Shown here: one piece after another, positions 36,567 through 64,000 of the stretch
How positions within the stretch are numbered: position 1 is the first letter of the stretch
Layout: each line of letters begins with the position of its first letter
DNA from: Macrostomum lignano
Lineage: Eukaryota
DNA length: 64,000 nucleotides
Direction of reading: 5' to 3'
Assembly (NCBI GenBank): GCA_002269645.1
Contig: NIVC01004004.1
Coordinates: 1,111 to 65,110 of the forward strand
Program-made: the position numbers and the translations under genes
The notes under the pieces: generated by a model
Told to the model about the DNA's origin: nothing
The model's input: only the letters and a program-made list of their open reading frames with translations
Databases searched by the model: none

Positions 36567-38932
36567 CCTTATGATTACCAGTGGCATGCTGTGCATGCCA
36601 TCGTTCATTCTGTCAATTGACCATAGACAGATTTGAAGTCGATGGGAAAGCGAGTTTAGACAGAATCATTGTCTGACTCAACCAAATGGAATGCTATGCA
36701 TGCCAAGGCCAAAAAACTGTTTGTATTGTCATACTGCGTCGGAGTGTCACAAAACAAATAGAAAACGACATACATTGCATGCACAAAGGTAAATCTTAAG
36801 AACATAAGGGCAAATGAAGCTGCATGCAAGTGAATGAAAATAATTTTAGCAACAGTTCGAATAAAGTTTCAGCAAAGCGCCAGTAATCAGTTAGCCGAGT
36901 GCCACTCAAAGAAGCACGGCTCCAGGCAAAGCCCAGGCTGACCGTCACAGCCTTGGCAGAAGTAGACGGTCCGCTTTTTCAGTCTGCGCTGGTAACAAAC
37001 TCGGCAACGCTTGGTAGGCCGTTCTTGTGCTGCGGTAGCGGGTAGCTTTTCCAGCCGGTGATGAATGTCGCCTGGCTGACGGGGAAGAGCTTGACGCTTA
37101 AATCTCGATCGACCATTTCCGCTGCTTTCAATCAAGTGCTTTACACACCTTTCAGTGTAGCTGAGAAAGCTCATGGATCCACCTAGATGTCGGTACACAA
37201 TCCAGGAGTTGCGAACCAGCTGCTGTAGCAGAAACACCGCCAACTTTACGAACCATTTGTGCGTTCGGCGGCATGCGCTGTAAGGCTGGGCTGCGGCATC
37301 CATCCGATCCACACCTCCCATGTTCTGATTATATTGCAAAACCGAGTTGGGCTTCAGCAGCTGCTGCTCCACACCACCGCGCAGTACCCGGCTAACCAAA
37401 GAGCTAGCAGCCGTTGAAGCGGAGTCCAACAGATAGACAGTCTTTGTTCCTGAGCTTCGCCTGTCAACCAGCTTCACAGCAAGGATGTCACCATGTCGGG
37501 CAAAGGAATGACTCGGTGGTTGCAAGAGCATATCTCGCAGAATCGGTGGAACGCCTCGGTCTTTGCGAACGGTCCCAGTTAAGGTTGTTCCTCTGGTCAG
37601 AAGGAACTTGGCCAGTCGCACCGATGAAAACCAACTGTCGCAAAAGACCCGATATCCAAGGTCCAGAATGTCGCGACAAAGTTCTACGACGACTCTCTCA
37701 CTGATTGAGAGCTGCGGCACATCGTTGCCGAACTGTTCATTCGCAATGGTGGTTGAATGTATCAGATAGTTCCACATGTAGCCTGTAGAAGACTCTGCAA
37801 GGCAGTACAATTTGATGCCAAACTTGGCTCTCTTGTTGGGCATGTACTGCTTAAAAATCAGCCTCCCTTTATAGAGCAGCAGCGCTTCATCAACGGCAAT
37901 GCTTTGACCGGGCAGGTAGCTGTTCTTGCAAACTGTCTGGACCATGTCTAGGAACGGCCTGATCTTGCACAAGGGATCACCAGCGTCGAAGTCAAGACAG
38001 TCATAGCAACGCAGCCATGACATGATTTGTTGAAACCGCGAGCGAGGAAGCATCTTCATGCTTTGAAAGTAGGGATGAAAGTAGAACGGGTCCGTAGACC
38101 AGTAAGCCGTCACCTCCGGTTTCTGTACAACTCCGGTATATAATATAACGCCGATCACCTTCTTCATCTCAGAAACAGTGCAGGGCTTCCACGTTCTGAG
38201 CCCGTAAGGCAGTTCATCATCTCCGTGTTCTTCTTGAAACTTGGCAATATCCAGCTGCGCTCTCTTGTTTGTCCACATGCACATCTGAAGCAGCAACTCA
38301 TCGGGTAAAAATTGCTCGAAAATGGCTGTCCAGCCGTCATCAACATCAGCAGGTACGGAGAATCCCGGATTGACTCCGCTTGCCCCGAGGAACTCGGGAA
38401 GAGAATTAGCTCGAGCATCAGTCTCTGGAGTTACTGATCTCCAATCATCGTGCATCATTCCCTGATCGTCTTCCTCCGGTCCATCGTTGCCTTCTTGATT
38501 TTCGTCACCGTCCTCTCCCTCGCTCTCGGCAGTGAAAAATGAGTCATCGCTCGACTCATCGCTCGATTCGCTGTCGAGGCCCAAGTTTCGCAAGGCTTGC
38601 TTGGCTGCTTGCCGTCGCTGTCTGACCGCTTGCATTGTAAGATTTGGTAAGTTGGGGTGGTGAGCTAAGGAGGCACCAGTAAAAATTCTTGCAGTTAACT
38701 TTTCATGCCTGTATTCCCTCCCTCTTGCCTTTTTTCTAGGTTGGCCATAGACTATTCTCCAGTCAAAGATGTCACTTCTCCTGTTGAGAAAGTGTTTTCT
38801 TGCCTGTCCATAATAAAGCAACTGTTTTGAAATTCGAAGTGTACAGCGCAGATCTAAATTGTCTATGGCATGCAGTGCTTGCCATTTGGTAAGATAGAGA
38901 TGTGGGGAAGGAATTCTGTCGTAGACAAGTGG
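36567..38932 (-). mobile_element. piggyBac DNA transposon inserted into LINE ORF2
   Basis: TTAA at 36563-36566 then CC; right end GG followed by TAA at 38933. Subterminal inverted motifs: CCAGTGGCATGCTGTGCATGCCAT versus ATGGCATGCAGTGCTTGCCATTTGG, and CCATAGACA versus TGTCTATGG. Confidence 0.88.
36887..38635 (-). CDS. piggyBac transposase (PGBD4-like), ~582 aa, uninterrupted
   Basis: Catalytic triad motifs IAVDEALL, FCDSWFSS and MGGVDRMD; acidic N-terminus; C-terminal Cys-rich CRVC..CQGC..LC..PCF..WH. Confidence 0.95.
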   Translation of the reverse strand: MQAVRQRRQAAKQALRNLGLDSESSDESSDDSFFTAESEGEDGDENQEGNDGPEEDDQGMMHDDWRSVTPETDARANSLPEFLGASGVNPGFSVPADVDDGWTAIFEQFLPDELLLQMCMWTNKRAQLDIAKFQEEHGDDELPYGLRTWKPCTVSEMKKVIGVILYTGVVQKPEVTAYWSTDPFYFHPYFQSMKMLPRSRFQQIMSWLRCYDCLDFDAGDPLCKIRPFLDMVQTVCKNSYLPGQSIAVDEALLLYKGRLIFKQYMPNKRAKFGIKLYCLAESSTGYMWNYLIHSTTIANEQFGNDVPQLSISERVVVELCRDILDLGYRVFCDSWFSSVRLAKFLLTRGTTLTGTVRKDRGVPPILRDMLLQPPSHSFARHGDILAVKLVDRRSSGTKTVYLLDSASTAASSLVSRVLRGGVEQQLLKPNSVLQYNQNMGGVDRMDAAAQPYSACRRTHKWFVKLAVFLLQQLVRNSWIVYRHLGGSMSFLSYTERCVKHLIESSGNGRSRFKRQALPRQPGDIHHRLEKLPATAAQERPTKRCRVCYQRRLKKRTVYFCQGCDGQPGLCLEPCFFEWHSAN

Positions 38933-41357
38933 TAAGAAGTGCTTCAGCATATGCTCAGCACATTCTTCCCGAGGGTACCCACTGCTAGATCGGAACCCAA
39001 CCATTCGATGGATGGAGCCACCCTAGCGGCGGGCATTATCACTGAAGACTTAATCGCTAGTGCGGTCAGAACCTTCAAGCCCTTCAAATCTCCTGGACCT
39101 GATGGTATCTACCCTGTTCTTCTTCGTGAAGCAGCCAAGATACCCTCGTTCTTGAGACTCACCCGCAATCTCATGCAGGCCTCTATCCAACTGGGATACG
39201 TTCTCAAGTGCTGGACCAAAGCTCGGGTAGTCTTCATTCCCAAACCTGGGAAGGTGACTACCAGAGCGTCAAGGCATTTAGGCCAATTAGCTTAACGTCA
39301 GCAATGCTTAAGCTCACTGAGAGGCTTATTCTCTGGCGGCTGCTTTCTTGCGAGCTGACAGCAATGCCCCTCAGCAATCATCAGCACGCCTTCCGTACCG
39401 GGAGGTCGACTGACAGTGCCCTGCATGCGATAGTCTAGAAGATTGAACGGGCGGACTGGGTGACGTTTACGCCCTGGCTCTTTTTCTCGACATTGTTGGC
39501 GCCTTCGACAACGTTATCTTTGAAGCGTTTCAGAGGGCCCTTCAAAACCGCAAAGCTCACGCTACCCTCATACGGTGGATCATGTACATGATCTCTAACC
39601 GTACGGTCACTGCCCAACTTCTAGGGCAAACTGCCTCCGCCAGAGTCTGTAAGGGTGGACCCCAAGGCGGAGTCCTCACCCCGACGCTCTGGAACCTGGT
39701 CATGGACGCTCTCCTGGGCGACCCTCGACCTGATCCCGTCTTCAAAGTCGGGTATGCTGACGACGTCACTGCCATTGTGGCTGGGCCGTCCCCCAGCACG
39801 CTCAGGGATCTGATGCAGAGCTTTATCCGCAAAGCAGAATCTTGGGCCAATGACAACGGTCTGGAACTCTCTGAGCCCAAAACTGTTGCCATTACGTTCA
39901 CCAGCAGAATACGCTGGAACATACGACCTCTGCAGTTATACGGCAGAGATATTGCCTTCGCGCACCAGACCAGATGTCTCGGGGTCATACTTGACCACCG
40001 GCTCAACTGGTCCTTCCACGTGAAAGCAAAAGCCAAGCGTGCCTCAGCCATCCTGGCCCAGCTCCGACGAGCACTTGGCACTTCTTGGGGTCTATCCCCA
40101 AAGCGGCTTTGGTGGATCTACACTTCCGTAGTAAGACCTGCCATTACGTACGCCTCGGTTGTCTGGGTTAGCGCTACCCAGGTCAATAGCCATGCAGATT
40201 TGCTCAACACGATCCAAGGCAGAGCGTGTAGGCTTATCTGCAACGCCACCAGGTCCACGCCCTTTGCCGGCATGGGGCCTTCCTTAATCTACCGCCTCTC
40301 GACCTCTTCGTCAGGGGTGAGGCGGCTAGAACGACGCGGTGTTTACTTGATGCCGGTGTCAAATTCCTTTACATGAGGGCACCTGCTAAGCGGAACCTCG
40401 TCCCGCATAGCGACCTGTGCCTCAACATTCTCAACGAGTGTCAGGCCAATCGCGTCTTCACCGATGGCATTGTCTCAACGCTCAACCTGAGACAACGCTA
40501 CTCCGTAGCTATCGACTCGCGCGATACCATCAATGACCACTGAAACCCTGGTGAGCTTCACTGCTACACCGACGGTTCTAAGCAGTCAGCCAACACCGGT
40601 TTTGGTGTTGGAATCTTCCTGAACTGGAGGGTCCATTTTCCATTCGGACAGCCAAGCTGCCTTGCACGCCATCAGTGGCTGTAGTACCAATTCTGCTACA
40701 GTCATCGACTGTATCAAACTCCTCAACATGTTGGGCTCCACCAACAAAATCACCCGTAAGTGGGTTCCGGAGCATGTGGGGATCCGAGGGAATGAGTTGG
40801 CTGACGCCCTTGCAAAATTTGGCGCCTCCGGCTCCTCTCTCGGTCCCGAACCCCTTGTCCCGATTCCTGGCTATGTCATCGACTCGCGCATCAAAGCGTG
40901 GATCAGGACCCAGCACCGCTCGACTTGGGCGAACTGCACTACCTGCAGGCAATCCAGAGGCGCTGTCCCTCAGCCCTCTCACCAGCTCCGGAAGCTCCTC
41001 TTGCGCCTCTCGCGCAGAGACATCCGGGCTGCCACCATGACCCTCTCAGGTCACGGCTGCTTCTCTAGGCACCAGTACCTGCAGGACTACGCCACCAACG
41101 CCATCTGCAGTTTCTGTAACTCAGGTGACGAAACCGCTGAACATTTCGTCAGCATCTGTCCCGCCTTTACGCGAGCCAGACTCACTTACCTCGGGCCACA
41201 CACATATATTACTGAAGCGTGCAAACCCGAAAACTTTAATCAGCTCATGCGCTACCTCCGGGCCACCCACAGGGCTGAACTCTCCTTTCCAGAGAACACT
41301 ATAGCTGCTGGCGACACTGGGGGACCTCCCTGGGCGGCGCCAACCCTTCGTCCATAG
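38933..41357 (+). pseudogene. LINE ORF2 remnant (RT, RNase H, C-terminal CCHC) with several stops and frameshifts; its upstream piece lies at 36396-36566
   Basis: FKPFKSPGPDGIYP, FRPISLTS, QHAFRTGRST, GGPQGGVLTPTLWNLVMD, GYADD, CYTDGS, WVPEHVGIRGNELADALAK and CSFC..ETAEHFVSIC. Confidence 0.93.
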
Positions 41358-52766: not shown

Positions 52767-53712
52767 ATGGACAGCAGGCTGTTGACGGTGGTAGCTGCGC
52801 TATCGCTGCTTGTCACCGCCTCTGCTGCAGCTGGTATGTCATTAAAATTGACTGAGTATCGCCCAATCACGAGCCAAATTCTTAAGAATTACCCTCGTAC
52901 ATGTACACGGTAGTACACCTAAACTTAATTCCAGAATTCTCGATTCAGCCAGTGCAACCAGTAGCAATCTCAGGGCACAGGACTTTTCCCGGTCTAAACG
53001 AGAGAGACTGCGCGATGAGGTGCGAATCGCTCGGCCTGCTCTGCTCGGTTGTTGCATTCGTGCGGGAATCCGGTCTCTGCCTGCTGTCTGCCATCCGGAA
53101 TGCCAGCTTCGGAGCTGCTGCTGGCAGCGGCCAGGTGTTTCGCCGATCCGGCAGCGGGCTGAGTTTTGAGCCGTGTGAGTCGGAATTCGGTTGATAGGGT
53201 TTTATGGTAATGCCGCCCGGCCCTAGGCAATGATAAACATTTTACCTGTAGCTGGTAAACATCTTTTTTTGAGATGAAAAGTCATAACTGGAAGGACGCT
53301 ACCTCGAACATCAGAAAATTTAATTGGGAGGTCTACGCTGCGACATGCATTAGCAATATAAGCTTTTGCAGCGTTTTATCAGCACTAAATTTGCAGTAAC
53401 TCACTTTCTGAACTTTCCCTGCAGTCCTGCAGTAACAGAGGAACCTGTCATGTATTTTGTCCTCCGACGCTGATTCAAACATTTAATCGAAGATTGACAA
53501 AAGACAAAATAAAAAACACCAATAGTTATTAATTTTTAGTGCATTATGTACGATTCTTAATTTCAGAATAAATCTGTACCAAACTTAATCAGATATTGTG
53601 GACGGCAGGACGTTCTGGGTGTTCTTGAAACGCGTTCTGGGCAATTTGAGCTTTGCTAAGACCTGGTCTGAATACGAAAATGGATTTAGTGATGGAATCG
53701 ACTTCTGGATTG
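52767..53712 (+). CDS. PAN/apple plus fibrinogen-domain protein (paralog 2), exons 52767-52833, 52935-53174, 53593-53712; the last exon is displaced beyond the window by the Polinton
   Basis: Same exon phases and near-identical exon sizes (67/240/120) as paralog 1; SFAKTWSEYENGFSDGIDFWIG followed by GTAAG. Confidence 0.85.
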
Positions 53713-53715
53713 GTA

Positions 53716-53973
53716 AGTAGTATAGAAAAAGACGCTTCTAGACCCAGAGCACTTTTTTAATGCCCGTTTTAAGGGTCTAGAGGGGGGACACGGGGGGTAA
53801 ATAAAAAAACACATCTAAACACCATTAATACATCTAATCACCCATAATCACCCCTAACAATAAAAATCACTTCCAAACACTCCCCAACACCCCCCTCGCG
53901 TCCCCCCTCTTAAGACCTTACAAACGGCCATTAAAATAAGGTCTGATCTAGAAGCGTCTTTTTCTATACTACT
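53716..53973. repeat. Terminal imperfect palindrome (fold-back) at the Polinton left end
   Basis: 53716-53742 is the exact reverse complement of 53947-53973; imperfect pairing continues ~55 bp inwards. Confidence 0.92.
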
Positions 53974-54030
53974 ACTCTATAACCCCTTGCCCGCGCCGCA
54001 GGCGCGAAGGGTCTTTTTCTGTTACTAAAA

Positions 54031-54345
54031 ATGACCCGAGTTTACACCTTTTCTGTTAGTGATACTTTTGAGACTGTTGCTAAAAATGCAGAGATAATAA
54101 AACAACATATTTTGAATGGAATAATTGATGAAGTTTATTTAAAATATGACGACAAGCATGACCTAAAACTTTATCCATTAGAGCTAGATGAGATGTATGA
54201 TTTAGAACAAGAGGGTGAGTTAATATTTCAACTTGGAGATTATTTAAATTCGGATGATTGGGAGGTTAGATCAACAGATTCCGAATCAACAAATAGTTCA
54301 TATGAAACCAGCGATTCAGAGAATGAAAGTGAAATTTTTATGTGA
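54031..54345 (+). CDS. Polinton hypothetical acidic protein, 104 aa
   Basis: Intact ORF with TAAAAATG start; no recognisable motif. Confidence 0.6.
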   Translation: MTRVYTFSVSDTFETVAKNAEIIKQHILNGIIDEVYLKYDDKHDLKLYPLELDEMYDLEQEGELIFQLGDYLNSDDWEVRSTDSESTNSSYETSDSENESEIFM

Positions 54346-54361
54346 AAAAAATATTTAAAAA

Positions 54362-54586
54362 ATGAATTATTATTCTATAACAGAAACGACTTTTATTATG
54401 AAAAATATATATAAAAAAATGAAGGTAAACTATTCCTATATCGGAAATGTTCCAATTAATGAACTTAATGAAAATTTAAGTCTAATCACTGTTGAACAAA
54501 TGTCAATAATAATATTAGTAACAATTATTGTAATAATATTGTTTTTGTTTGTAATAAAAAATTTACTACCATGTTGTCTTAAGTAA
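54362..54586 (+). CDS. Polinton small membrane protein, 74 aa
   Basis: Intact ORF with A-rich start and C-terminal hydrophobic segment IIILVTIIVIILFLFVI. Confidence 0.55.
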   Translation: MNYYSITETTFIMKNIYKKMKVNYSYIGNVPINELNENLSLITVEQMSIIILVTIIVIILFLFVIKNLLPCCLK

Positions 54587-54596
54587 CTGTTTGAAC

Positions 54597-55574
54597 TTAG
54601 TTCGCAGACATTATCTGGTTCTCATAAAAAGAACCCAATATTTCTTCACCGTCCTTATCAGCAATTATATAGGTTGTAGGATTGGTATTTAAAACTTTAC
54701 TGATAGTAAATTTCTCACTTATCTTCCAATATCCTTTTCTTCCTTTTTCAAACTTATCTTTCCATTTATAGATATAAACAGAATCACCAACCTTAAAACC
54801 TTTAGTTTTCTTTTTTTCAAAATCTCCAAAAGTAACCTTAACATTTTCAGGTTTGTTATAAGCTTGTTGAGGAGCCATCTTTATGGCCGAATGATATGAA
54901 TTGTTATAATCTTTTACAACGTCTGGTAATATTTTTACCCATTTTTGGTTTCCATTAAGACTAAACTGAAACCACAATTTCTTACCTAAAGTTCGATTAA
55001 ATCTTTCTATTAATGCGTTTTTACTCTCTCCATAAATAGAATAAATTTTATTAATATACTCCCCATTCGCGTCCTTTTTCCTTTCTTGTCCTTTTTCAAA
55101 ATGATACAATTTATACATATGAGGATTGTAAAATTCTTTTCCTTCATCAACACACAACCGGTTGCTTTTTTCATCAAGGCTTCTAAAAGCAGCAGCAACC
55201 TCCTCTCCTTTTTTGGATTTTAAAGGAATTGCCCACGCGTATCGAGTAAAACCATCTAATATGGTTAAAATATATTTATATCCTTTATCGATCGGCATAG
55301 ACATTAAATCAGCATACCAAATTTCGTTCTTTTTGAAGTTCATGATTTTTCTATAAAATTTAGGTTTTCGATATTCTTTATGAAGAATCTTTGCCTCATC
55401 AGAACTTAACCCACCGCCACTTAACAACAAACACTCAACACAATTATTTCCATGTTGATTATAATTAATTCCCAAACCAAATTTAACTTTAGATTGTAGA
55501 ATCTTTTTAACCATCCACCTAGTTAATTTTTGACCTACCGATAATCCCTGCAAGTTATCTAATCCTTGAATCAT
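54597..55574 (-). CDS. Retroviral-type (rve) DDE integrase of Polinton type, probably the 3' part of a PLA2-integrase fusion gene
   Basis: WYADL (D), CVDEGKEF (D), LIERFNRTL (E), LTILDGFTRYAWAIPLKSK, and C-terminal FKVGDSV..FEKG..W..F.I.KVLNTNPTTY..EEI.G.FYE. Confidence 0.95.
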   Translation of the reverse strand: MIQGLDNLQGLSVGQKLTRWMVKKILQSKVKFGLGINYNQHGNNCVECLLLSGGGLSSDEAKILHKEYRKPKFYRKIMNFKKNEIWYADLMSMPIDKGYKYILTILDGFTRYAWAIPLKSKKGEEVAAAFRSLDEKSNRLCVDEGKEFYNPHMYKLYHFEKGQERKKDANGEYINKIYSIYGESKNALIERFNRTLGKKLWFQFSLNGNQKWVKILPDVVKDYNNSYHSAIKMAPQQAYNKPENVKVTFGDFEKKKTKGFKVGDSVYIYKWKDKFEKGRKGYWKISEKFTISKVLNTNPTTYIIADKDGEEILGSFYENQIMSAN

Positions 55575-55600
55575 TTTTTGATCGGCTTCATGTTTTAATC

Positions 55601-56206
55601 TTAATGCTTCCTCGGCGGGTTCTTGTCAGCATCTCTATATGCTAAGTCGTGATAGTATGCTAACCAATCAATCCCATTTATTGGAATTGAATCAGATTTT
55701 GGAGTATTGTCAGGATTTAATCTCAAATCTAAGCGAGTGCCGGGTAGTTTACCCTCAATCTTTCGAAAGAGGCTGGAGCACACCTTAAGCGGCGATAATT
55801 ACCGCCCATCTCCGTCTGCTCTCTGAACCTTCTCCTTATATTTAAAATACTTAGGAGCTTGGCTGCGCATTGCCACCGTGTCTTCAAGCTTTTTACCTTT
55901 GGGAAGAGGAGTTACCTCTGTTCCTTCAAAAGATTTCTCAATTGAAGTGGTACTTGAAGCTGTATGACGGGTTTCACGCAATTTGGAGATGTCGCCACAA
56001 ATAGTGACTAGCAAGGACATTGCCTTCCTCACTCAGGCCACGGGTTAACCTGTGAAGTTCATTGATGGTAGGTGTAGCTCACCCGTATACCTCCCAGTAG
56101 TAAATATTGGTGGTAAGCTTGTTAATCCTTTTTGAACATCTAAAAATCCTCCTTCAAATACTAATTGATCGAACCTACGGTTCGCGAACTTCGTTCGGTT
56201 GCTCAT
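55601..56206 (-). CDS. Parvovirus-type phospholipase A2-like domain gene, exons 56206-56048 and 55744-55601, split by a group I intron
   Basis: Joining the exons gives GELHLPSMNFTG|PGTRLDLRL..PINGIDWLAYYHDLAY (Ca-loop GPG and catalytic HDxxY). Confidence 0.88.
55745..56047 (-). ncRNA. Group I self-splicing intron (IC1-like, 303 nt, no internal endonuclease ORF)
   Basis: P1 CAGGU/GCCUG with U.G at the splice site; P3 CAUCUCC/GGAGAUG; P element AAAUUGCGUGAAA and Q element AAUGCGCAGCC forming P4; P5abc with A-rich bulge and GAAA loop; P6 CUCCU/AGGAG; P7 GAGAGCA/UGCUCC; P8 GGCGG/UCGCC; P9 CCUC/GAGG; P9.0 AG/CU. Removal restores the frame. Confidence 0.92.
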
Positions 56207-56756
56207 TTTTAATAGCCATAAAAATACATGATAGCACCAATTGTTTTGCAAACTCTTCGATAGTTGGTTGTTTAACTTTTTTATAGCGATTATCTACGCT
56301 AGTTAAGTATCTTTTATTTCTCCAATTTTCAGACTTTTTAATCTGATCATCGTCTTTGTAACTAAATGAAGAAGCGGGGATGAAATGATCAATATCTAAC
56401 TTTCCAGTATAATCTTTTGATACATAATAATTTCTTGTGAAATTTAACCAATCAAAAAAGAATTCTTTTGTGCAACCAAGATATGAGATATAGTCCTTGT
56501 CATTAAAATTTTTCAACGCCCAATTTATTCTATTTCTAATTAAAACAATATGTTTGTAATTATCATCAGTGTGATACTTATTTTTTCTATATTCATTCCA
56601 TTTATCTTTATTGTTTTTTATCCAAATAGCAGATGAGGTATTATGACAAGATCGACAATCATTTCTAAATTTTTTTGAATCATTTCTCCAAAAATAAAAT
56701 TCTTTTGTCATCGGTTTTTCTTGTTTACACTTAGTACAAATCTTATTAGTTTCCAT
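56175..56756 (-). CDS. Free-standing HNH-type endonuclease with N-terminal Zn ribbon, 193 aa
   Basis: CTKC..CRSC; YLGCTKEFFFDWL; LDIDHFIPASSF..NWRNKRYL..DNRYK, the HNH/HNN pattern of viral homing-like nucleases. Confidence 0.8.
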   Translation of the reverse strand: METNKICTKCKQEKPMTKEFYFWRNDSKKFRNDCRSCHNTSSAIWIKNNKDKWNEYRKNKYHTDDNYKHIVLIRNRINWALKNFNDKDYISYLGCTKEFFFDWLNFTRNYYVSKDYTGKLDIDHFIPASSFSYKDDDQIKKSENWRNKRYLTSVDNRYKKVKQPTIEEFAKQLVLSCIFMAIKNEQPNEVREP

Positions 56757-56783
56757 TTTATAAAAAATAAATTTACCAATTAA

Positions 56784-57449
56784 TTAAACACCAGTATGTC
56801 CAGCAGCTTTCGCAGCAGCTAAAACAAGTTTTCGTGGTGTTTTAAATCCATCACCAACAGCTGGTTTGTTATTTATAGAATTAACAATCCTTTTATACAA
56901 GCTGGTATTTTTAACAGCTCCTCCTAACTCATCATAAAAAATTCTAGCACTTATTAATTCATCCCTAGTATATAAATCAGGGTTAAACTTTACCCTAGGG
57001 TTCATAACAATATTATATGCTCCACCCAATTCTCTATATAGTTCATTTCGATTTTTATCAACTCCACCAATTCGATAATTATTATTACCTAAATCTGTCG
57101 CAGCAATACTAGCTGGTACTCTTGGATATTGTTCCCGATCGCCCCGCTCTGCACGTCTAATCTCTGCAATTCTCAATTGTGCTTGATCAACATCATAAGC
57201 AGGCGGCTCATCTAAAATTTCATCCTCTTTTGGCTCCGTATTTTTAGCAATTTTTTCCAGAAGATCTTTATCTGTTTTTTCTAGTTCACTAATTTTCCCA
57301 GTAATAGGATTAACAAAAGGAGCAGCAAATCTTTCGCCAGCTAATTGTATTCCTAACTTTCTTTTTTGTAAATTTCTAACAAAATCAGAATATCTTTGCT
57401 TCTCTTTATAAATCGCTAACTCTCCATCAACGTCCATAAATTGACTCAT
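56784..57449 (-). CDS. Polinton hypothetical protein, 221 aa
   Basis: Intact ORF with TAAAAAATG start, divergent from the capsid gene. Confidence 0.7.
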   Translation of the reverse strand: MSQFMDVDGELAIYKEKQRYSDFVRNLQKRKLGIQLAGERFAAPFVNPITGKISELEKTDKDLLEKIAKNTEPKEDEILDEPPAYDVDQAQLRIAEIRRAERGDREQYPRVPASIAATDLGNNNYRIGGVDKNRNELYRELGGAYNIVMNPRVKFNPDLYTRDELISARIFYDELGGAVKNTSLYKRIVNSINNKPAVGDGFKTPRKLVLAAAKAAGHTGV

Positions 57450-57483
57450 TTTTTAACATAAAAAACTTTTTTAACTTAAAAAA

Positions 57484-58956
57484 ATGGCTGAAACAAAAAC
57501 TATGTGGAGTGATGAATTTCATTTCAAAAAGCACCGACAGTATATTAATGAGGTCAGAGCAAGAGATTTAAATTATACCCTACCAACAAGTGATAATTCA
57601 AATAACTTTACTACTGGAACGGTAACTTTTGACATCGGCGCAACCAACACTATATTGGATATGAAAAATGCGTTTTTCCGCGTTAGATGGTTGTATACTA
57701 GAAATGATGGAACTGCTCTTGCAGCCGGAGATATCGCAGATCGATCCGGAATAATAATAGAAAATGATTGGTTTTATAAATGTTTTTCCCAAGCTCAACT
57801 AACTGTTAATGGTGCTGAGGTTGAGACATCATCAAACCCCGCAGAGATTAATGGAGTTTTGAAACATTTAAATTATACTTATTTATCAAAACAAGTTGGT
57901 GATAATGTTGGGTGGATGCCGGATAAAGGTAACGGGCAAGCATTAGTTTTCCCTAATGTACAAAACGCAGCCGGTGCAGATACTGCAGCGCTAATTGTTT
58001 ACCTTAATACAAACATAGTTCCAGTTGTAACCACTATGACTAATACAAAAGATATTAATACTGGTTTTATAGATCGTCAGAATAAATTCCCAGTCGCGGT
58101 TTTAACCACAGCAACAGCATATGAGCAGGACTTTTCAATCTTTCCACTATTTGGGTTTTTCTCACCAAATCGGGTATGGAAAGGATTAAAATTTGGGATA
58201 CAGTTGCAAATATCTGGTGGATATCAGCCTAGGATACTTTATGGAACCTCAATTTCAACCGATATAGCAGTTCGTATAGATTCAATTCAATTAGTCGTAC
58301 CAACTATTGAGGTAACAGCCCCACTTTTAAAACACATCGATAATCAGTTAACGCATGATCAGGAAATATTTTATTTGAATCGTCGACATTTTATGCGAAC
58401 CATTAATAATAACCAGGATTCATTCCAGTGGCAAATACTGACATCAAAACGTCGGGTGAGATATATTTTTGTTTGGTTTAAGATAACAAATAGAAGGAGT
58501 AAAAGAGCAAATGGGGATTTATATTGGCTTCAATCCGGTGCCATAGCAGAACAAGCAGCCACCGCAACAGACAATGCGGCTGCAGCTATTAACGAGTTTA
58601 ATGTTCAGAATATCCGCCTGCAGGTTGATGATCAATATTATCCGGTTAAAGACCCCCTAAATTTAAATACAGCAAATAATAATGTTAATGATTTTATAAA
58701 ATATTATCAAGATTATGCCAAAAATGAAGCGTATGCCGTCCCTCAGTACACACCCACAGAGTTTCTAAACATTCATCCAGTGGTTGTTTATGATCTAACG
58801 GCACAGAAAGAAAACGTAGCCAATATTGGACTTAATTATATGTTAGAGATTAATAAAACCGGTAATCAGGCACTTGACGCCCACGTATTGTTTCTAGAGG
58901 AATATATGTCAATTGCTAAAGCTGATGGCACGATTGTTCGGGACGCGCCACTTTAG
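57484..58956 (+). CDS. Double jelly-roll major capsid protein, 490 aa
   Basis: Size, position and Polinton MCP-like motifs FSQAQLTVNGAEVE..NPAEI, VRYIFVWFK, NIRLQVDDQYYP and PVVVYDLTAQ. Confidence 0.88.
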   Translation: MAETKTMWSDEFHFKKHRQYINEVRARDLNYTLPTSDNSNNFTTGTVTFDIGATNTILDMKNAFFRVRWLYTRNDGTALAAGDIADRSGIIIENDWFYKCFSQAQLTVNGAEVETSSNPAEINGVLKHLNYTYLSKQVGDNVGWMPDKGNGQALVFPNVQNAAGADTAALIVYLNTNIVPVVTTMTNTKDINTGFIDRQNKFPVAVLTTATAYEQDFSIFPLFGFFSPNRVWKGLKFGIQLQISGGYQPRILYGTSISTDIAVRIDSIQLVVPTIEVTAPLLKHIDNQLTHDQEIFYLNRRHFMRTINNNQDSFQWQILTSKRRVRYIFVWFKITNRRSKRANGDLYWLQSGAIAEQAATATDNAAAAINEFNVQNIRLQVDDQYYPVKDPLNLNTANNNVNDFIKYYQDYAKNEAYAVPQYTPTEFLNIHPVVVYDLTAQKENVANIGLNYMLEINKTGNQALDAHVLFLEEYMSIAKADGTIVRDAPL

Positions 58957-59040
58957 TGTCGCAGTGCAAAGCACGTCGCACCATTGTAAAATGAGTGCAG
59001 GTCTCCGACCGTCGCGCCTATTTAAATTATTTCTTTAAAA

Positions 59041-59835
59041 ATGGTAAAGGCAAAACACAATAAAATATTTCCAAATGATCCTTTTCTTTGTTTAGTAATC
59101 GGAGGATCAGGTAAAGGAAAAACACACTTTGTTTACGATTTATTAACAACAGATGGAATGTTAGACTATAATAATTTAATAATTTATACTAATAAACCTA
59201 GAATAAAATATTATGAATTTCTTAAACATGGATTAAAAAACAAATTAAAAAAAGATGTCTTGTTTAGAATGTTAAGAGCATATGAGCAATATGAGGATGA
59301 TGACGAACCGCGATTTAATCTAGCAGACATTGAGGATTTATGTAAAACAATGGCACAACAGCCAGAAAACATCACCGATCGCCCCGAAGGGTCGCGGACT
59401 TCGTCCGATCGCGCCCCAACTGTTAGAGTATCAACCCGATTAGCCTATGATCAAATTCCAAAACATGATAAAACACTAATTATTTTTGATGATTGTATTA
59501 ATGACGGTGATCAAGAATTGCAAAAGGAAATTTTTGTTAGTGGTAGAGGAGATGGAATTGGAGCTTTTTATCTTACTCAATCCTTTAGAGAATTAGAATC
59601 GATTATAAAAAAGAATGCTAGCTGTTGTGTAATGTTTGATTTAGATAACTATGATCTACAAAATATTCACGCTAGATTTAATCCCGGATTGGATGCAAAA
59701 CCATTTAAAAGTATGTGTAAAAAAATTTGGGATGATAGCCAATACAAACATATTTATATCAATCCGAGGTTAGAAAGGAAACATAGAATTTTAACAAATT
59801 TGATAAAAGAAGATAATGAGGAAGAAGAGACATAG
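59041..59835 (+). CDS. A32-like genome packaging ATPase, 264 aa
   Basis: Walker A GGSGKGKT, Walker B LIIFDD, and GR..GIGAFYLTQS. Confidence 0.93.
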   Translation: MVKAKHNKIFPNDPFLCLVIGGSGKGKTHFVYDLLTTDGMLDYNNLIIYTNKPRIKYYEFLKHGLKNKLKKDVLFRMLRAYEQYEDDDEPRFNLADIEDLCKTMAQQPENITDRPEGSRTSSDRAPTVRVSTRLAYDQIPKHDKTLIIFDDCINDGDQELQKEIFVSGRGDGIGAFYLTQSFRELESIIKKNASCCVMFDLDNYDLQNIHARFNPGLDAKPFKSMCKKIWDDSQYKHIYINPRLERKHRILTNLIKEDNEEEET

Positions 59836-59855
59836 CACAATTTCCCACTATAAAA

Positions 59856-60670
59856 ATGACTACAAATTTAAATACTATAAAACAATTGGTAGATCGAACT
59901 AATTCAAAATTTAGTACAACATTACAGTTTATAATGACAACCAGCGAGCAACGGATTCAATTGCGCGATCCATTACAACTTGATCAAAGCCTAAGTTATC
60001 AAATAGGTTTAATTCTATTTTCGGTTTTCAACATGCCTCAATTAATTAATGCAACAAATAATCAATTTAGATATTCTAAAGATTCCGGAGCCAATTGGAC
60101 AACATTTAGCGTTAACCCAGGAGCGTATAGCTATACTGATTTGAATGCTTATATAGAAGGAAATTAACAACTAATGGTGATTGGGTAGCAGGAGCAATTG
60201 TTATAGGTGTTGATTTACCGTCTGGCAGATTCACACTATCACTAGGATCCGGATATCAGGTTGATTTCACAATTGCAAATTCACTCAGAACCATACTTGG
60301 ATTTAATTCCCGAATAGTTACCACATCAAGCACCGGTGATACAGTTGGAAATATTGAGGGTGGAGTAATACAATTAATATAACAACCGACATATCAAACG
60401 GTGGTTATATAACAGATAATAACGGAGTTTTGGTTCAACGTGGAATTATTTATTCAATCCCATTTCTTGCTGTTCCAATTGGAGAGAAAATGATTGTTGC
60501 ACCCAAACCCCAATATATTACCTTAAATCAATATAGTTCAATCAATTTATATTAGGATTGTAGATGAAAGCGATAGATTAATAAGTTTTGGTGGGCAATC
60601 AATAACAATAATTTTACGTATAAAACAGGTTTACGAACCTTTGGTTCAGGACTTTGTCCGTTTCCTATAG
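59856..60670 (+). pseudogene. Minor capsid (penton) protein, frameshifted as assembled
   Basis: PLQLD..Y.IGL..FSVFN..I...NN.FRY..PGAYSYTDLN at the start. The end IYIRIVDESDRLISFGGQSITIILRI is reached only through several 1-bp shifts. Confidence 0.75.
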
Positions 60671-60882
60671 TAAAAATGGGTAATCGAACAACATGTTCGC
60701 GTGCAAAGCACGATAATAATAATTTAATAAAAAAAAATCAGAAAAAGTTAAAAAAGCTGAAGATAATTACGAACTAGAACTAGCAAAATTAAGGCAGTTA
60801 CAAGCTGATAAAATAAGAAAGGAATTGTTAAAACCCACACCTACGAAACTAACTAAAACCAAGAGTTTTTCAGGAACATAAA

Positions 60883-61320
60883 ATGACCATGACGTGGGAT
60901 GATTTTAAACAAAGATATGGAACGGACACAACAAGCAATATCGAATTAACAAATTGGGCGAGGCAGTTAAAAATAAAACCATTCAGATGTGTTATGCGGA
61001 TGAGATAAAAGACTTACCACAATATGGATGTTTCATTGTTAATATTGAAACAACAAAAGAAAATGGTGTTCATTGGTCAGCAGTTTATTCAAACCTAAAC
61101 TTGTTTATTTTTTTGATTCATACGCGCTTCCTCCGTTACAGGAAATAAAAGACAATTTAATCATACTAAAAATCGTTTATGTGGAGATCATCACGAACAA
61201 TTTCAAACCTTTGATAAAAGTTATTGCGGGCAAGCAGCGTTGTATTTTTTATATCGACTTTCGAATGAAGCTCGTGTAAACCCCGAAGTATTTAAGACTA
61301 TTTTAGACTCTATAAAATAG
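60883..61320 (+). pseudogene. Adenain-type cysteine protease, frameshifted as assembled
   Basis: IVNIETTKENGVHW (His), YFFDSY (Asp) and QTFDKSYCG (Gln/Cys) spread over shifting frames. Confidence 0.85.
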
Positions 61321-61330
61321 ACAGTAAAAA

Positions 61331-63360
61331 ATGTTATTTTCTGGAACACCCTCATGGAACGGAACATCAAGTACTGGTGGTGGTACTTCTGGTGGAATAA
61401 GTGTTACATTCGGAGATAACCGATATATTAATGAAGATGAAGGTTATAAAAAAAGTGAAGTTGATACTAAACTAAATTTAAAAAGAAATGTTGCAGATTC
61501 CTATACCAAAACTCAAATAGATAATTCCCTAAATTTAAAACGGAACGTAGCCGATTCATATACAAAAACAGAGGTTGACAATGGGTTAAATTTAAAAAGA
61601 GATATAACTGATTCTTATTCTCGAACTCAAATAGATGATTCATTAAATTTAAAACGCAATACGGCCGATTCTTATACCAAAACCGAAGTTGATAATTCCC
61701 TAAATTTAAAACGGAATGTTGCTGATTCCTATACCAAAACTGAAGTTGATAATTCCCTAAATTTAAAAAGAGATATAACTGATTCCTATACCAAAACCGA
61801 AGTTGATAATTCCCTAAATTTAAAAAGAGATATAACTGATTCTTATAGCAAAACTGAAGTTGATAATTCCTTAAATTTAAAAAGAGATATAACTGATTCC
61901 TATACCAAAACGGAGGTTGATAATTTAGTTGGGGTGGAGCCCCAAACAGATCGATTCCAAACGGTTGAAACTGGTCACATACCTACCATGGCAGATTGGA
62001 GTGGAAATGGTTTTGCAATAACCGCAAGCACTGCATTTAATACAACTGATTTTGCAAGTTGGAAAGCGTTTGATGGAAATGATTCAACAGATTGGGCAAC
62101 AAATAATACTCAAACCGATTATTGGATTCAAGTCCAATGCCCTTCCGCAATAATGTGTTATAAAATTGATTTACGTGGTAGGCCATCACCTTCAACCGAG
62201 CACCCAGCATCATGGCGATTTGAGGGAAGTAATGACAATACAAGTTGGGACGTATTAATACCTGCGGATAGTTCTGTAGAATAAATAACTCAACTCAAAC
62301 AATTAATGTCACACAAAATTTTGATAAAACATATTCATATTTCAGATTGTTCTGTCTTACATCAACTCGGGTTCACAACCCGGCTGTCAACCTTCAGATT
62401 TATAGACAGACTTTTACAATTCTTGATTTAAATTGGGAGTAGTTAATCAATCAATTGATATGGGTAATACAATTACTAATATCTCTAATATAAACGATAA
62501 CAGTTCTGTTGTTACTAAAGGTTATGTTGACACGCGAGTAACACAAACGGCGGATGGCCGAATGTCTTTTAATGATAAAATAAAATTGGATGGAATACCT
62601 GCAATCGATGCCGCTTTGTACGAGCCCGTAATTTGCAATTGGACTGGATATCAAAACCCAACCACAGCCGGTGATATTTTTCCAACTGGAAGTTTTGTTG
62701 GTAGCGCTACTTATATTGATTATCAAAATGGAGCTAGAATTACTGATGAAGCAAGTGGTCAGTCTGGAGCGTTGCAATTTAATTTCACCCATTTTCGTAA
62801 TATCTCCGCCTCCTTCTATTTCCGAGTTGCTAATGCTACAGGAATGGTGCTGATGCGGTTTGGTTTTATGCATATTGTCACGAACGTCCAACAAGTGAAT
62901 TTGGATCCGGGTTAACAACCCGCGCCGGCTTGATTGTGTTTGCGAGTGAATGGCATGATAGAGTTGGGGTTGTTTGGAGCAATATAAAATCAGACGGTGC
63001 AACAGCTCGTAATGATGTTCTTAATGACGCAGATCAAACTATAACCTATGCTAATATTGATAACGGCGATTGGCATCTTTTTGAAATTAATATTTTAAAT
63101 CAAAGAGTTTGGTATCAAATAAGCACATACAATGTATCAGCTAATACATATACGCTAATTGGGCAAAACTTTTTTACATATGATAGTGGAACTTGGGAGA
63201 TTTAGATAAAACGGGAACTCTTATGGGTTTTGGTGCTCGAACTGGAGGAGCAGATGCCGCACATTTTATTCGTGGTGCAGCCGTTTGTGGTAGCACATCA
63301 GCAGGATATGATTTTGCTGCGACCGCATATTTGGAACGGCCACAAACCGAAATACCTTAA
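61331..63360 (+). pseudogene. Fibre/receptor-binding-like protein: 17-aa repeats, F5/8C-like domain, L-type-lectin-like domain; frameshifted after 62284
   Basis: Repeats YTKTEVDNSLNLKRDITDS; WKAFDG..W..WIQV..WRFEGSNDNTSW; downstream frames give GADAVWFY and GFGARTGG..H.I. Confidence 0.65.
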
Positions 63361-63374
63361 ATATTTCTATATAA

Positions 63375-63602
63375 ATGGCTTTTAGTAGAACTCCATCGAT
63401 GCGGCAAAATAATGTTATTATTCCTATTCCTAAACAAGAATCAAATATAAAAACATTCAAATCTCATACCAAATTTTTATTTAGTACTGTAAATGTTCAG
63501 GATAATAAGAAGCTTCAAGAATTAATTAAGTTATTAAAAAATCATATTATACTTCAAGAGTTTTGGAAAATAGGATTTAAATGGAGAAAAAAGAAAGAAT
63601 AA
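63375..63602 (+). CDS. Polinton hypothetical protein (may continue by frameshift)
   Basis: ORF with TAAATG start directly after the fibre gene. Confidence 0.4.
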   Translation: MAFSRTPSMRQNNVIIPIPKQESNIKTFKSHTKFLFSTVNVQDNKKLQELIKLLKNHIILQEFWKIGFKWRKKKE

Positions 63603-64000
63603 CTCCAATACAATACCTATTAAGCTCGGGACAAATCCCCAAAGAGCGTGGGGAATTCATTTTGGTGCTATTAAAAATAGACGAGAATGTCGGTATCTGA
63701 AGCAGATAAATGGGAACGCGACCGGTTCAACCAACGTAAAGGTCAGATGTTGAGTAATGTTGATCGATAAATTATGATTATGATTTATATGCTAAAAAAG
63801 TAAGAAGAGTTTCAAACCATATAAGAAATATGGATTTTTCAATATTGGATTTGGAAGCTTATCAATGTTATGTGTAATCGTTTTAGGTATTTTAACAATC
63901 TATTCCAACTCTTAATTTATCTCAATTATTTTTAGGTATTTCAATTGGCTCAATATCAGGTTTTGAATTGATCAGGAACTTATCAATACTTTTAGCAATT

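What the first reader, a model, noticed from the sequence alone, without database searches (positions are those of the whole stretch)
55745..56047. Group I self-splicing intron inside an endogenous virus in an animal nuclear genome
Seen (minus strand): a 303-nt insert splits NFTG|PGTR exactly in the PLA2 Ca-binding GPG loop and has in-frame stops, so it must be removed. It folds into the complete group I core: P1 CAGGU/GCCUG (56038-56034) with the U.G splice pair, P2 and P2.1, P3 (55991-55985 with 55813-55807), P4 UGCGU/GCGCA, P5abc (CUUCAAG/CUUGAAG, A-rich bulge, GAAA loop), P6, P7 GAGAGCA (55823-55817)/UGCUCC (55780-55775), P8 and P9. P7 differs from the usual GACUA/UAGUC by compensatory changes while keeping the bulged A and G-C guanosine site, which argues for selection on structure. 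Established: IC1 introns are typical of fungal, algal and protist nuclear rDNA, and in animals group I introns are known from mitochondria of cnidarians, sponges and placozoans. Inference: a ribozyme intron carried into an animal genome by a Polinton, probably acquired from a microbial eukaryote. I cannot check whether this has been reported.
Basis: partly seen in the sequence, partly recalled or inferred. Interest (0 to 1): 0.96.

Follow-up and report, generated by a model that had tools for sequence, protein, structure and literature searches.

The report
Ribozyme intron in an endogenous virus
A real group I (self-splicing type) intron, next to its likely homing nuclease gene, interrupts the phospholipase-integrase gene of a Polinton-like virus copy lying in an animal-type chromosome. 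Such introns were already reported in related viruses of protists, and this copy sits in a decaying gene.

Summary
Rfam's group I intron model matches minus strand 56057-55754 at 62.2 bits (threshold 50), but only when about 1 kb is scanned. The 10.5-kb and 64-kb scans lose it at the filter stage. Uninterrupted homologues read straight across the insert, so its bounds are 56047-55745 (303 nt, three in-frame stops).

- The intron's last base is not the usual guanosine. A natural self-splicing precedent for this exists.
- The host gene is a PLA2-integrase fusion with one frameshift.
- An intact HNH nuclease gene lies directly upstream. In related contigs its homologue sits inside the homologous intron.
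- The same codon is interrupted in several metagenomic relatives, while their close kin lack the insert.

So the intron belongs to the virus family and was not picked up inside the animal. The flank is animal-like (arthropod-like lipin, fibrinogen-type exon, piggyBac). No protein-primed polymerase lies in the window, so "Polinton" is unproven. Group I introns in Polinton-like viruses of protists were published in 2025. I rate this a new member of a known kind, of moderate interest. I did not fetch relatives' DNA or join the exons.

The parts
55745..56047 (-). Group I intron without an ORF, 303 nt. It has P1-P9 with a P2/P2.1 extension and a P5abc extension. The 5' splice site follows U56048 and the 3' exon starts at 55744.
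   Evidence: RF00028 at 62.2 bits against a gathering score of 50. Helix-by-helix pairing and P10 4/6. Junction fixed by uninterrupted homologues.
54597..56206 (-). PLA2-integrase fusion gene, given as one part with the intron included. It joins a parvovirus-type PLA2 domain to an rve integrase core. It is broken by one frameshift and has no in-frame stop outside the intron.
   Evidence: PF00665. 452 homologues, many combining PF08398 and PF00665. Alignment A1. tblastn gives 3 pieces in 2 frames with 0 stops. The profile matches retroviral-type integrase structures.
56048..56206 (-). Exon 1 (53 codons). It ends at the G codon just before the PG of the Ca-binding loop.
   Evidence: Aligns to the N-termini of P0003, P0005, P0197 and P0179.
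56175..56756 (-). Intact free-standing HNH/EndoVII-type nuclease gene (193 aa). It ends 128 nt upstream of the intron insertion site and overlaps the start of exon 1. It is the likely homing endonuclease.
   Evidence: phrog_1035 endonuclease VII at E 1.1e-7 and phrog_2255 HNH. It is 33% identical over 190 aa (E 2e-29) to P0167, whose C-terminus is the translation of the homologous intron core.
56784..57449 (-). ORF of 221 aa, function unknown.
   Evidence: No family hit.
57484..58956 (+). ORF of 490 aa. It is a major capsid protein only by position and size; the assignment is not verified.
   Evidence: No Pfam, PHROG or PDB match. The single-sequence model is unusable, with pLDDT 31.
59041..59835 (+). 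A32-type packaging ATPase.
   Evidence: PF04665 at 28.9 bits against a cut-off of 22.8. phrog_2666 terminase large subunit.
61331..62284 (+). Fibre-like ORF with eight 19-aa repeats and a discoidin (F5/8 type C) domain.
   Evidence: PF00754 at E 1.7e-9. Repeat period of 57 nt.
53716..64000 (.). AT-rich (about 32% GC) virus-like element. The left border is approximate, and the element runs off the right end of the window.
   Evidence: Composition step. Gene content.
53598..53712 (+). Host exon of a fibrinogen-related gene, followed by a GT donor. It is the last host coding sequence before the element.
   Evidence: PF00147 at 22.1 bits, E 1.5e-4. Sequence read.

Best explanation
A mobile group I ribozyme intron lives in the virus family and came into the animal chromosome as part of an integrated Polinton-like virus genome.

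Splicing (inferred). In the transcript of the PLA2-integrase gene the RNA would fold into the P1-P9 core. It would bind free guanosine at the G-C pair next to the bulged A in P7 and cut after U56048, the U.G wobble of P1. It would then join exon 1 to the base at 55744, helped by a 4-of-6 P10 pairing. This would restore the Ca-binding loop that uninterrupted homologues encode.

Spread (inferred). The HNH nuclease gene directly upstream has homologues that sit inside the homologous intron in relatives. It is the likely homing endonuclease that cuts intron-less alleles in co-resident genomes, so the intron, and with it the nuclease gene, is copied in by repair. This is the intron-encoded or 'collaborative' homing known from phages.

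What is shown: the ribozyme architecture, the exact exon junction, the nuclease homology and its link to this intron family, and interrupted and uninterrupted alleles among relatives.

What is inferred: self-splicing, homing, and expression in an animal cell.

In this particular copy the host gene is frameshifted and the intron does not end in G. The copy is probably a recent fossil, not a working gene.
For: -: RF00028 at 62.2 bits over the full model.
- all helices paired. The P7 G-C pair plus bulged A is present. P10 is 4/6 for these bounds against 2/6 for the alternatives. The insert has 3 in-frame stops.
- PLA2-integrase homologues read uninterrupted across the insertion point, and the exons match on both sides.
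- ORFs P0002, P0043, P0180 and P0181 begin with the same translated intron tail directly before PGT. P0013 and P0187 read out of a homologous intron at the same codon. Seven further ORFs begin with Met directly before PGT. Close kin P0003, P0197, P0179, P0014, P0020, P0196 and P0188 are uninterrupted.
- ORF193 is an HNH/EndoVII-type nuclease homologous to P0167 (E 2e-29), whose last 46 residues are the translation of the intron's P2.1-P5 region.
- P0166, a second nuclease-like ORF, runs into the same core.
- PMC3679873: homing endonuclease genes are inserted in P1, P2, P6, P8 or P9 of nuclear introns, and a natural intron with a terminal A self-splices.
- PMC11296320: describes collaborative homing by adjacent free-standing nucleases.
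Against: - The last intron base is not the near-universal guanosine.
- The gene has a frameshift, so splicing could not give a full-length protein here.
- No RNA data are available.
- No nucleotide alignment of relatives was made, so covariation rests on comparison with the Rfam consensus and on back-translation of ORFs that read into related introns.
- I did not show that P0167-type nuclease ORFs lie in the PLA2 intron itself. The only hint is that members of the two clusters sit on contigs of the same length.
- The MFE z-score of the isolated RNA is only -1.75.
Confidence: 0.72

Rival explanations
1. Fossil only. The intron was functional in the free virus, but in this integrated copy it is inert sequence. 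It cannot complete exon ligation and the gene is already a pseudogene, so nothing happens at this locus.
For: The last base is not G. There is one frameshift in the same gene. The stretch 60168-61330 holds only short ORFs.
Against: The core is undamaged, with all helices paired and 62.2 bits. The HNH, ATPase and 490-aa ORFs are intact. A natural intron with a terminal A self-splices (PMC3679873). Relatives P0002 and P0043 share the same 3' tail reading, so the tail is not random decay.
Confidence: 0.45
2. The element is not in the animal genome. It would be a free Polinton-like virus of a protist or of a co-infecting large virus, joined to host DNA by mis-assembly or contamination.
For: GC content steps sharply from 42-66% to about 32%. 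Nearly all relatives come from metagenome assemblies. A foldback sits exactly at the border. The second end is not in the window.
Against: The contig is continuous from a fibrinogen-type exon with its splice donor into the element. The element shows decay typical of endogenous copies. An integrase gene lies at the end next to the junction.
Confidence: 0.15
3. The intron was acquired by this Polinton from nuclear rDNA of a fungus, alga or protist.
For: Peripheral P2/P2.1 and P5abc elements resemble those of nuclear rDNA introns (PMC3679873). No close phage relative was found; the only match is a 48-nt core hit.
Against: Homologous introns occupy the same codon in diverged relatives. The window and P0002 are 58% identical in protein yet share the intron tail. 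These introns have their own nuclease genes, so residence in the virus family is old. No donor was identified.
Confidence: 0.1
4. It is an ordinary spliceosomal intron, or a chance structure.
For: A GT lies at the exon 1 border.
Against: No AG acceptor restores the reading frame seen in homologues. The covariance-model E-value is 3.6e-15.
Confidence: 0.01

Closest known systems
Group I introns (RF00028) in endogenous Polinton-like viruses of protists: Paulinella micropora, Desmodesmus armatus and Rhodomonas lacustris (PMC12220804, 2025)
   Same: The same RNA family in the same broad class of integrating viruses. Sizes are similar (309-376 nt there, 303 nt here).
   Different: There the introns sit in a gene for a protein of about 50 aa upstream of the capsid gene, no nuclease was annotated, and the hosts are protists. 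Here the intron sits in the PLA2 loop of a PLA2-integrase gene, is linked to an HNH nuclease, and lies in an animal-type chromosome.
[quoted passage not shown] 2009, as cited in PMC11296320)
   Same: An ORF-less intron lies in a conserved codon with a nuclease gene immediately beside the interrupted gene. Relatives carry the nuclease inside the intron.
   Different: This is a eukaryotic virus-like element. Cleavage and homing were not tested. The nuclease lies upstream and overlaps the start of the interrupted gene.
Nuclear rDNA group I introns of the IC1/IE type, such as Tetrahymena and the myxomycete introns (PMC3679873)
   Same: The P1-P9 core, the G-C guanosine site in P7, an extended scaffold domain, and homing endonuclease genes in peripheral loops.
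   Different: Those all interrupt rRNA genes. This one interrupts a protein-coding gene. Subgroup membership was not testable here.
Diderma L2066 intron with a terminal A instead of G (PMC3679873)
   Same: The last intron base is A.
   Different: That intron is proven to self-splice. Here activity is unknown.
PLA2-like genes of Polintons, adintoviruses and entomopoxvirus-associated Polinton-like viruses (PMC3671162, PMC8502044, PMC11296320)
   Same: A parvovirus-type PLA2 domain (PF08398) in a virus of this supergroup.
   Different: In adintoviruses it is fused to a pX-like domain (PLA2X). Here and in hundreds of metagenomic relatives it is fused to the rve integrase. No intron is reported in those papers.

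Membership tests
Group I intron (Rfam RF00028) | Covariance-model score at or above the curated gathering score | tested here: met
   62.2 bits against 50, over the full model. The match is lost by the filters in larger scans.
Group I intron (Rfam RF00028) | P1 formed by the 5' exon end and an internal guide, with a U.G wobble at the splice site | tested here: met
   P1 is 7/7, with U56048.G56038.
Group I intron (Rfam RF00028) | Core helices P3-P9 in the canonical order, with the P3/P7 pseudoknot | tested here: met
   All are paired and in the right order.
Group I intron (Rfam RF00028) | Guanosine-binding G-C pair in P7 next to a bulged nucleotide | tested here: met
   G55821-C55776 next to bulged A55822.
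Group I intron (Rfam RF00028) | 3'-terminal guanosine. This is near-universal but not strictly defining, because a natural self-splicing exception exists (PMC3679873). | tested here: not met
   The only boundary that reproduces the homologues' reading ends in A. Boundaries that end in G change the loop length and give P10 2/6. In the related P0013/P0187 lineage the last codon is Met, so the last base there is G.
Group I intron (Rfam RF00028) | Removal restores a continuous reading frame that matches intron-less homologues | tested here: met
   The exons were aligned separately and abut at G|PG. The insert is a multiple of 3 nt. The exons were not joined.
Group I intron (Rfam RF00028) | Self-splicing or guanosine-dependent cleavage | not testable with these tools
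   No RNA or biochemical data.
Subgroup IC1 | Subgroup-specific peripheral elements and junction consensus | tested here: inconclusive
   P2, P2.1 and P5abc are present, but no P9.1 or P9.2. No subgroup model is available.
HNH homing endonuclease | HNH / beta-beta-alpha-metal nuclease domain | tested here: met
   phrog_1035 at E 1.1e-7 and phrog_2255. Pfam, NCBIfam and PDB gave nothing. The structure model was unusable, with pLDDT 41.
HNH homing endonuclease | Genetic association with a self-splicing intron | tested here: met
   It is adjacent to the intron in the window. Its homologue P0167 reads into the homologous intron core.
HNH homing endonuclease | Cleavage of the intron-less target site | not testable with these tools
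   -
Polinton / Maverick | Protein-primed family B DNA polymerase | tested here: inconclusive
   None lies in 53.7-64 kb. The element runs off the window.
Polinton / Maverick | Retrovirus-type (rve) integrase | tested here: met
   PF00665. The profile hits PFV integrase structures.
Polinton / Maverick | Double jelly-roll capsid protein, penton, A32-type ATPase and adenain-type protease | tested here: inconclusive
   The ATPase is met. Capsid, penton and protease were not verifiable.
Polinton / Maverick | Terminal inverted repeats and a target-site duplication | not testable with these tools
   The right end lies outside the window. A foldback lies at the left border.
Parvovirus-type PLA2 domain (PF08398) | Profile match and an HD catalytic dyad downstream of the Gly-rich Ca loop | tested here: met
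   Exon 2 alone gives E 0.077. Full-length homologues carry PF08398. The loop and the HD..Y motif align.

The most novel reading that the evidence does not exclude
The intron family is still active. Group I ribozyme introns with their HNH nucleases would be circulating today in Polinton-like viruses that infect or integrate into animals. The copies with a terminal A would be splicing-competent, and ribozyme splicing of a protein-coding transcript would take place in animal nuclei. The window and its relatives would also capture both states of the nuclease (inside the intron and free-standing beside it) within one virus family.
Probability: 0.15. Interest if true: 0.8.

Novelty: new member of a known kind. 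Interest (0 to 1): 0.58.

Why it matters
- Location. A 2013 review states that all known group I introns in eukaryote nuclei interrupt rRNA genes (PMC3679873). In animals they are known from mitochondria of non-bilaterians (PMC5633667). A ribozyme intron carried into an animal chromosome inside a virus-derived element extends that map.
- Method. Surveys of endogenous Polinton-like viruses call genes on the assumption that such elements have no introns (PMC10120064). The intron is also lost by Rfam's default filters in windows of 10 kb or more. Such introns are therefore probably under-counted, and interrupted genes are mis-called as 5'-truncated ORFs, as seen in P0002, P0013 and P0016.
- Biology. 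The intron targets the catalytically essential Ca loop of the PLA2 domain. It occurs as interrupted and uninterrupted alleles, with the nuclease either inside or beside it. This makes it a natural series for studying how introns and homing nucleases associate in eukaryotic viruses.

Tried and rejected
- Whole-window Rfam gathering scan and 10.5-kb E-value scan: no RF00028 hit, a filter effect.
- Second intron in the fragmented stretch 59.8-61.4 kb and in 62.2-64 kb: none.
- Word-based homologue search with the HNH ORF: nothing.
- Pfam, NCBIfam and PDB for the HNH ORF: nothing. Only PHROGs hit.
- Structure predictions of the HNH ORF (pLDDT 41) and the 490-aa ORF (pLDDT 31) were unusable, so no fold search was run.
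- Phage collection searched with the intron: only a 48-nt core match in Brochothrix phages, uninformative.
- Look-up of the host piggyBac transposase to name the host: not on record.
- Boundary models that end the intron on a G: rejected. They add or remove residues against all uninterrupted homologues and have poorer P10.
- Spliceosomal reading: rejected.
- Four further hits of the intron-translation search (P0168-P0171) are repetitive, unrelated proteins.

Full report
**1. Is it there?**

Yes. A scan of window 55400-56400 against all Rfam families gives RF00028 (group I catalytic intron). The match is on the minus strand at 56057-55754, at 62.2 bits against a gathering score of 50. The E-value is 3.6e-15 and the full model is matched. 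The same hit is absent from the 64-kb gathering scan and from a 10.5-kb E-value scan. The bit score does not depend on the filters, so the hit is real, but routine pipelines would miss it.

| Helix | Pairs | Note |
|---|---|---|
| P1 | 7/7 | U.G wobble at U56048 |
| P2 | 8/8 | |
| P2.1 | 5/5 | |
| P3 | 7/7 | |
| P4 | 6/6 | |
| P5 | 4/4 | |
| P5a / P5b / P5c | 7/7, 6/6, 5/5 | GAAA loop on P5b |
| P6 / P6a | 3/3, 5/5 | |
| P7 | six pairs | bulged A next to a G-C pair |
| P8 | 6/6 | |
| P9 | 4/4 | |

Against the Rfam consensus printed, the two middle pairs of P7 are changed on both strands and remain paired. The minimum-free-energy fold of the isolated RNA is only mildly better than shuffles (z = -1.75). 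That is normal for a pseudoknotted ribozyme and carries little weight.

**2. Boundaries**

I searched the two exons apart and did not join them. Exon 1 is 56206-56048. Exon 2 runs downward from 55744.

- In alignment A1 the uninterrupted homologues (P0003, P0005, P0004, P0014 and others) read ...G|PG... straight across the point where the window has the insert.
- tblastn of five homologues covers both exons.

- The Rfam alignment stops 9 nt short, at a G that in fact belongs to the P9 stem.
- The last base of the insert is not the guanosine that group I introns normally end with.

Boundary models that do end on a nearby G would add or remove residues relative to every uninterrupted homologue. 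They also give a poorer P10, 2/6 against 4/6. A natural nuclear intron with a terminal A that self-splices efficiently is on record, Diderma L2066 (PMC3679873). The feature is therefore unusual, not disqualifying.

**3. The interrupted gene**

It is not a stand-alone PLA2. It is a fusion of a parvovirus-type PLA2 domain with an rve integrase.

- 452 homologues were found at E below 1e-5. Many are 380-490 aa and carry both PF08398 and PF00665. Nearly all come from ENA, JGI or Logan assemblies.
- A profile of the family matches retroviral-type integrase structures.
- In the window the gene has one frameshift and no in-frame stop outside the intron. tblastn finds three pieces in two frames.

**4. 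The intron belongs to the virus family**

The evidence comes from ORFs that gene callers started inside, or ran into, related introns.

- P0002, P0043, P0180 and P0181 begin with the same 13-residue translation of the intron's 3' tail that the window shows, directly before PGT. Twelve of the 13 residues are identical, although P0002 is only 58% identical to the window in the protein proper.
- P0013 and P0187 read out of a homologous but diverged intron at the same codon. Their last codon before PGT is Met, so that lineage ends in G.
- Seven more ORFs start with Met directly before PGT.
- Close kin of each group are uninterrupted: P0003 and P0197, P0179, and P0014, P0020, P0196 and P0188.
- The window's closest relatives (P0001 and P0003, 68-69% identical) lack the insert, while the more distant P0002 has it. 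Such a patchy pattern is expected for a mobile intron or for repeated precise loss.
- Back-translation of P0187 is compatible with the consensus P7 sequence on both strands, where the window has the compensated variant. This is an inference only, because Leu, Ser and Arg codons are ambiguous.

**5. The nuclease**

- ORF 56756-56175 (193 aa, intact) matches phage endonuclease VII and HNH families (phrog_1035 at E 1.1e-7, phrog_2255). It ends 128 nt upstream of the insertion site and overlaps the start of exon 1.
- I searched the in-frame translation of the intron (77 aa) against 1.84 billion representatives. This returned P0167, which represents a cluster of 7 on ENA contigs of up to 42 kb.
- The first 185 residues of P0167 are homologous to ORF193 (33% identity, E 2e-29).
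- Its last 46 residues are the translation of the intron's P2.1-to-P5 region (61% identity).
- In those relatives the nuclease gene therefore sits in a 5' peripheral loop of the intron and runs into the core. This is the classical layout of an intron-encoded homing endonuclease (PMC3679873 lists P1, P2, P6, P8 and P9 as insertion points).
- A second hit, P0166, is a different nuclease-like ORF with weak similarity to PF09553. It runs into the same core (70% identity over 37 residues).
- In the window the nuclease is free-standing beside an ORF-less intron. This is the layout known from collaborative homing in phages (cited in PMC11296320).
- That the P0167-type ORFs lie in the PLA2 intron specifically is suggested only by members of both clusters sitting on contigs of identical length.

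**6. Setting**

- The element is about 32% GC and runs from about 53.7 kb to beyond the window end.
- It holds the PLA2-integrase gene, the HNH gene, a 221-aa ORF, a 490-aa ORF (capsid by position only), an A32-type ATPase and a repeat-rich discoidin-domain ORF.
- The stretch 60168-61330 holds only short ORFs in several frames. No family hit and no second intron were found there. I could not establish which genes are broken there or how often.
- No protein-primed polymerase lies in the window, so 'Polinton-like virus element' is the safer name.
- The flank is animal-like:
  - a lipin exon whose best hits are arthropod lipins at about 36% identity;
  - a RhoGAP ORF;
  - an intact piggyBac-type transposase and a reverse-transcriptase fragment;
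  - a fibrinogen-type exon ending in a splice donor 4 nt before a 258-nt foldback that borders the element.
- The host species was not identified. It is not human.

**7. Comparison and novelty**

- RF00028 introns in endogenous Polinton-like viruses were reported in 2025 for three protist hosts only, in a different gene and with no nuclease annotated (PMC12220804).
- I found no paper that mentions a group I intron in an animal-resident element, or in a PLA2 or integrase gene of this virus supergroup.
- Mechanistically nothing is new. The target gene, the host setting, the nuclease in two positions and the terminal base are new. I rate it a new member of a known kind, with interest 0.58.

**8. 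Steps left out, and a slip**

- I did not fetch the DNA of any relative's contig, or of the element beyond the window, by look-up, pattern or accession. I cannot tell whether these are viruses of animals. As a result no nucleotide covariation analysis was possible.
The splice model was tested exon by exon.
- These were part of the Tetrahymena intron, a short capsid-PLA2 motif of a parvovirus, and a tetraloop-receptor motif.

Noticed in passing
window 53716-53973: A 258-nt near-perfect foldback with 27-nt perfect outer arms and a DNA fold z-score of -11.8. It lies exactly between the host fibrinogen-type exon and the AT-rich element. It could be a MITE or the element's terminus. A weak, sub-threshold miRNA-family hit there only reflects the hairpin.
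   Followed up: partly
window 1-64000 versus 55400-56400: The RF00028 match, which is above the gathering score, is found only when about 1 kb is scanned. The 10.5-kb and 64-kb scans drop it at the filter stage. Routine Rfam annotation of eukaryotic genomes would miss introns of this family.
   Followed up: yes
window 61331-62284 (+): A fibre-like ORF with eight 57-nt (19-aa) tandem repeats followed by a discoidin (F5/8 type C) domain. Discoidin-domain fibre proteins are described for Polinton-like viruses of protists (PMC12220804).
   Followed up: partly
window 60168-61330: Only short ORFs in several frames, where a penton and a protease would be expected. No family hit and no second group I intron were found. 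This is probably decay.
   Followed up: partly
window 36887-39004 (-): An intact 705-aa piggyBac-type transposase ORF (PF13843 at E 6.6e-70, plus the zinc finger). It may be an active or domesticated host transposon.
   Followed up: no
window 6900-29000: A dense series of GC-rich, strongly strand-skewed minisatellites (periods 13-57 nt, up to 77 copies). They surround the RhoGAP exon (15815-17392) and the lipin exon (24576-26876).
   Followed up: no
proteins P0002, P0013, P0016, P0022, P0043, P0186, P0190-P0192, P0194: These public gene calls for PLA2-integrase relatives start inside or at the end of an intron and lack exon 1. The database ORFs are therefore truncated artefacts of intron-blind gene calling.
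   Followed up: partly
protein P0092 and P0198: Integrase relatives are annotated in a metagenome-assembled genome of a gammaproteobacterial symbiont of a bivalve. These are probably virus or host contigs binned by mistake.
   Followed up: no
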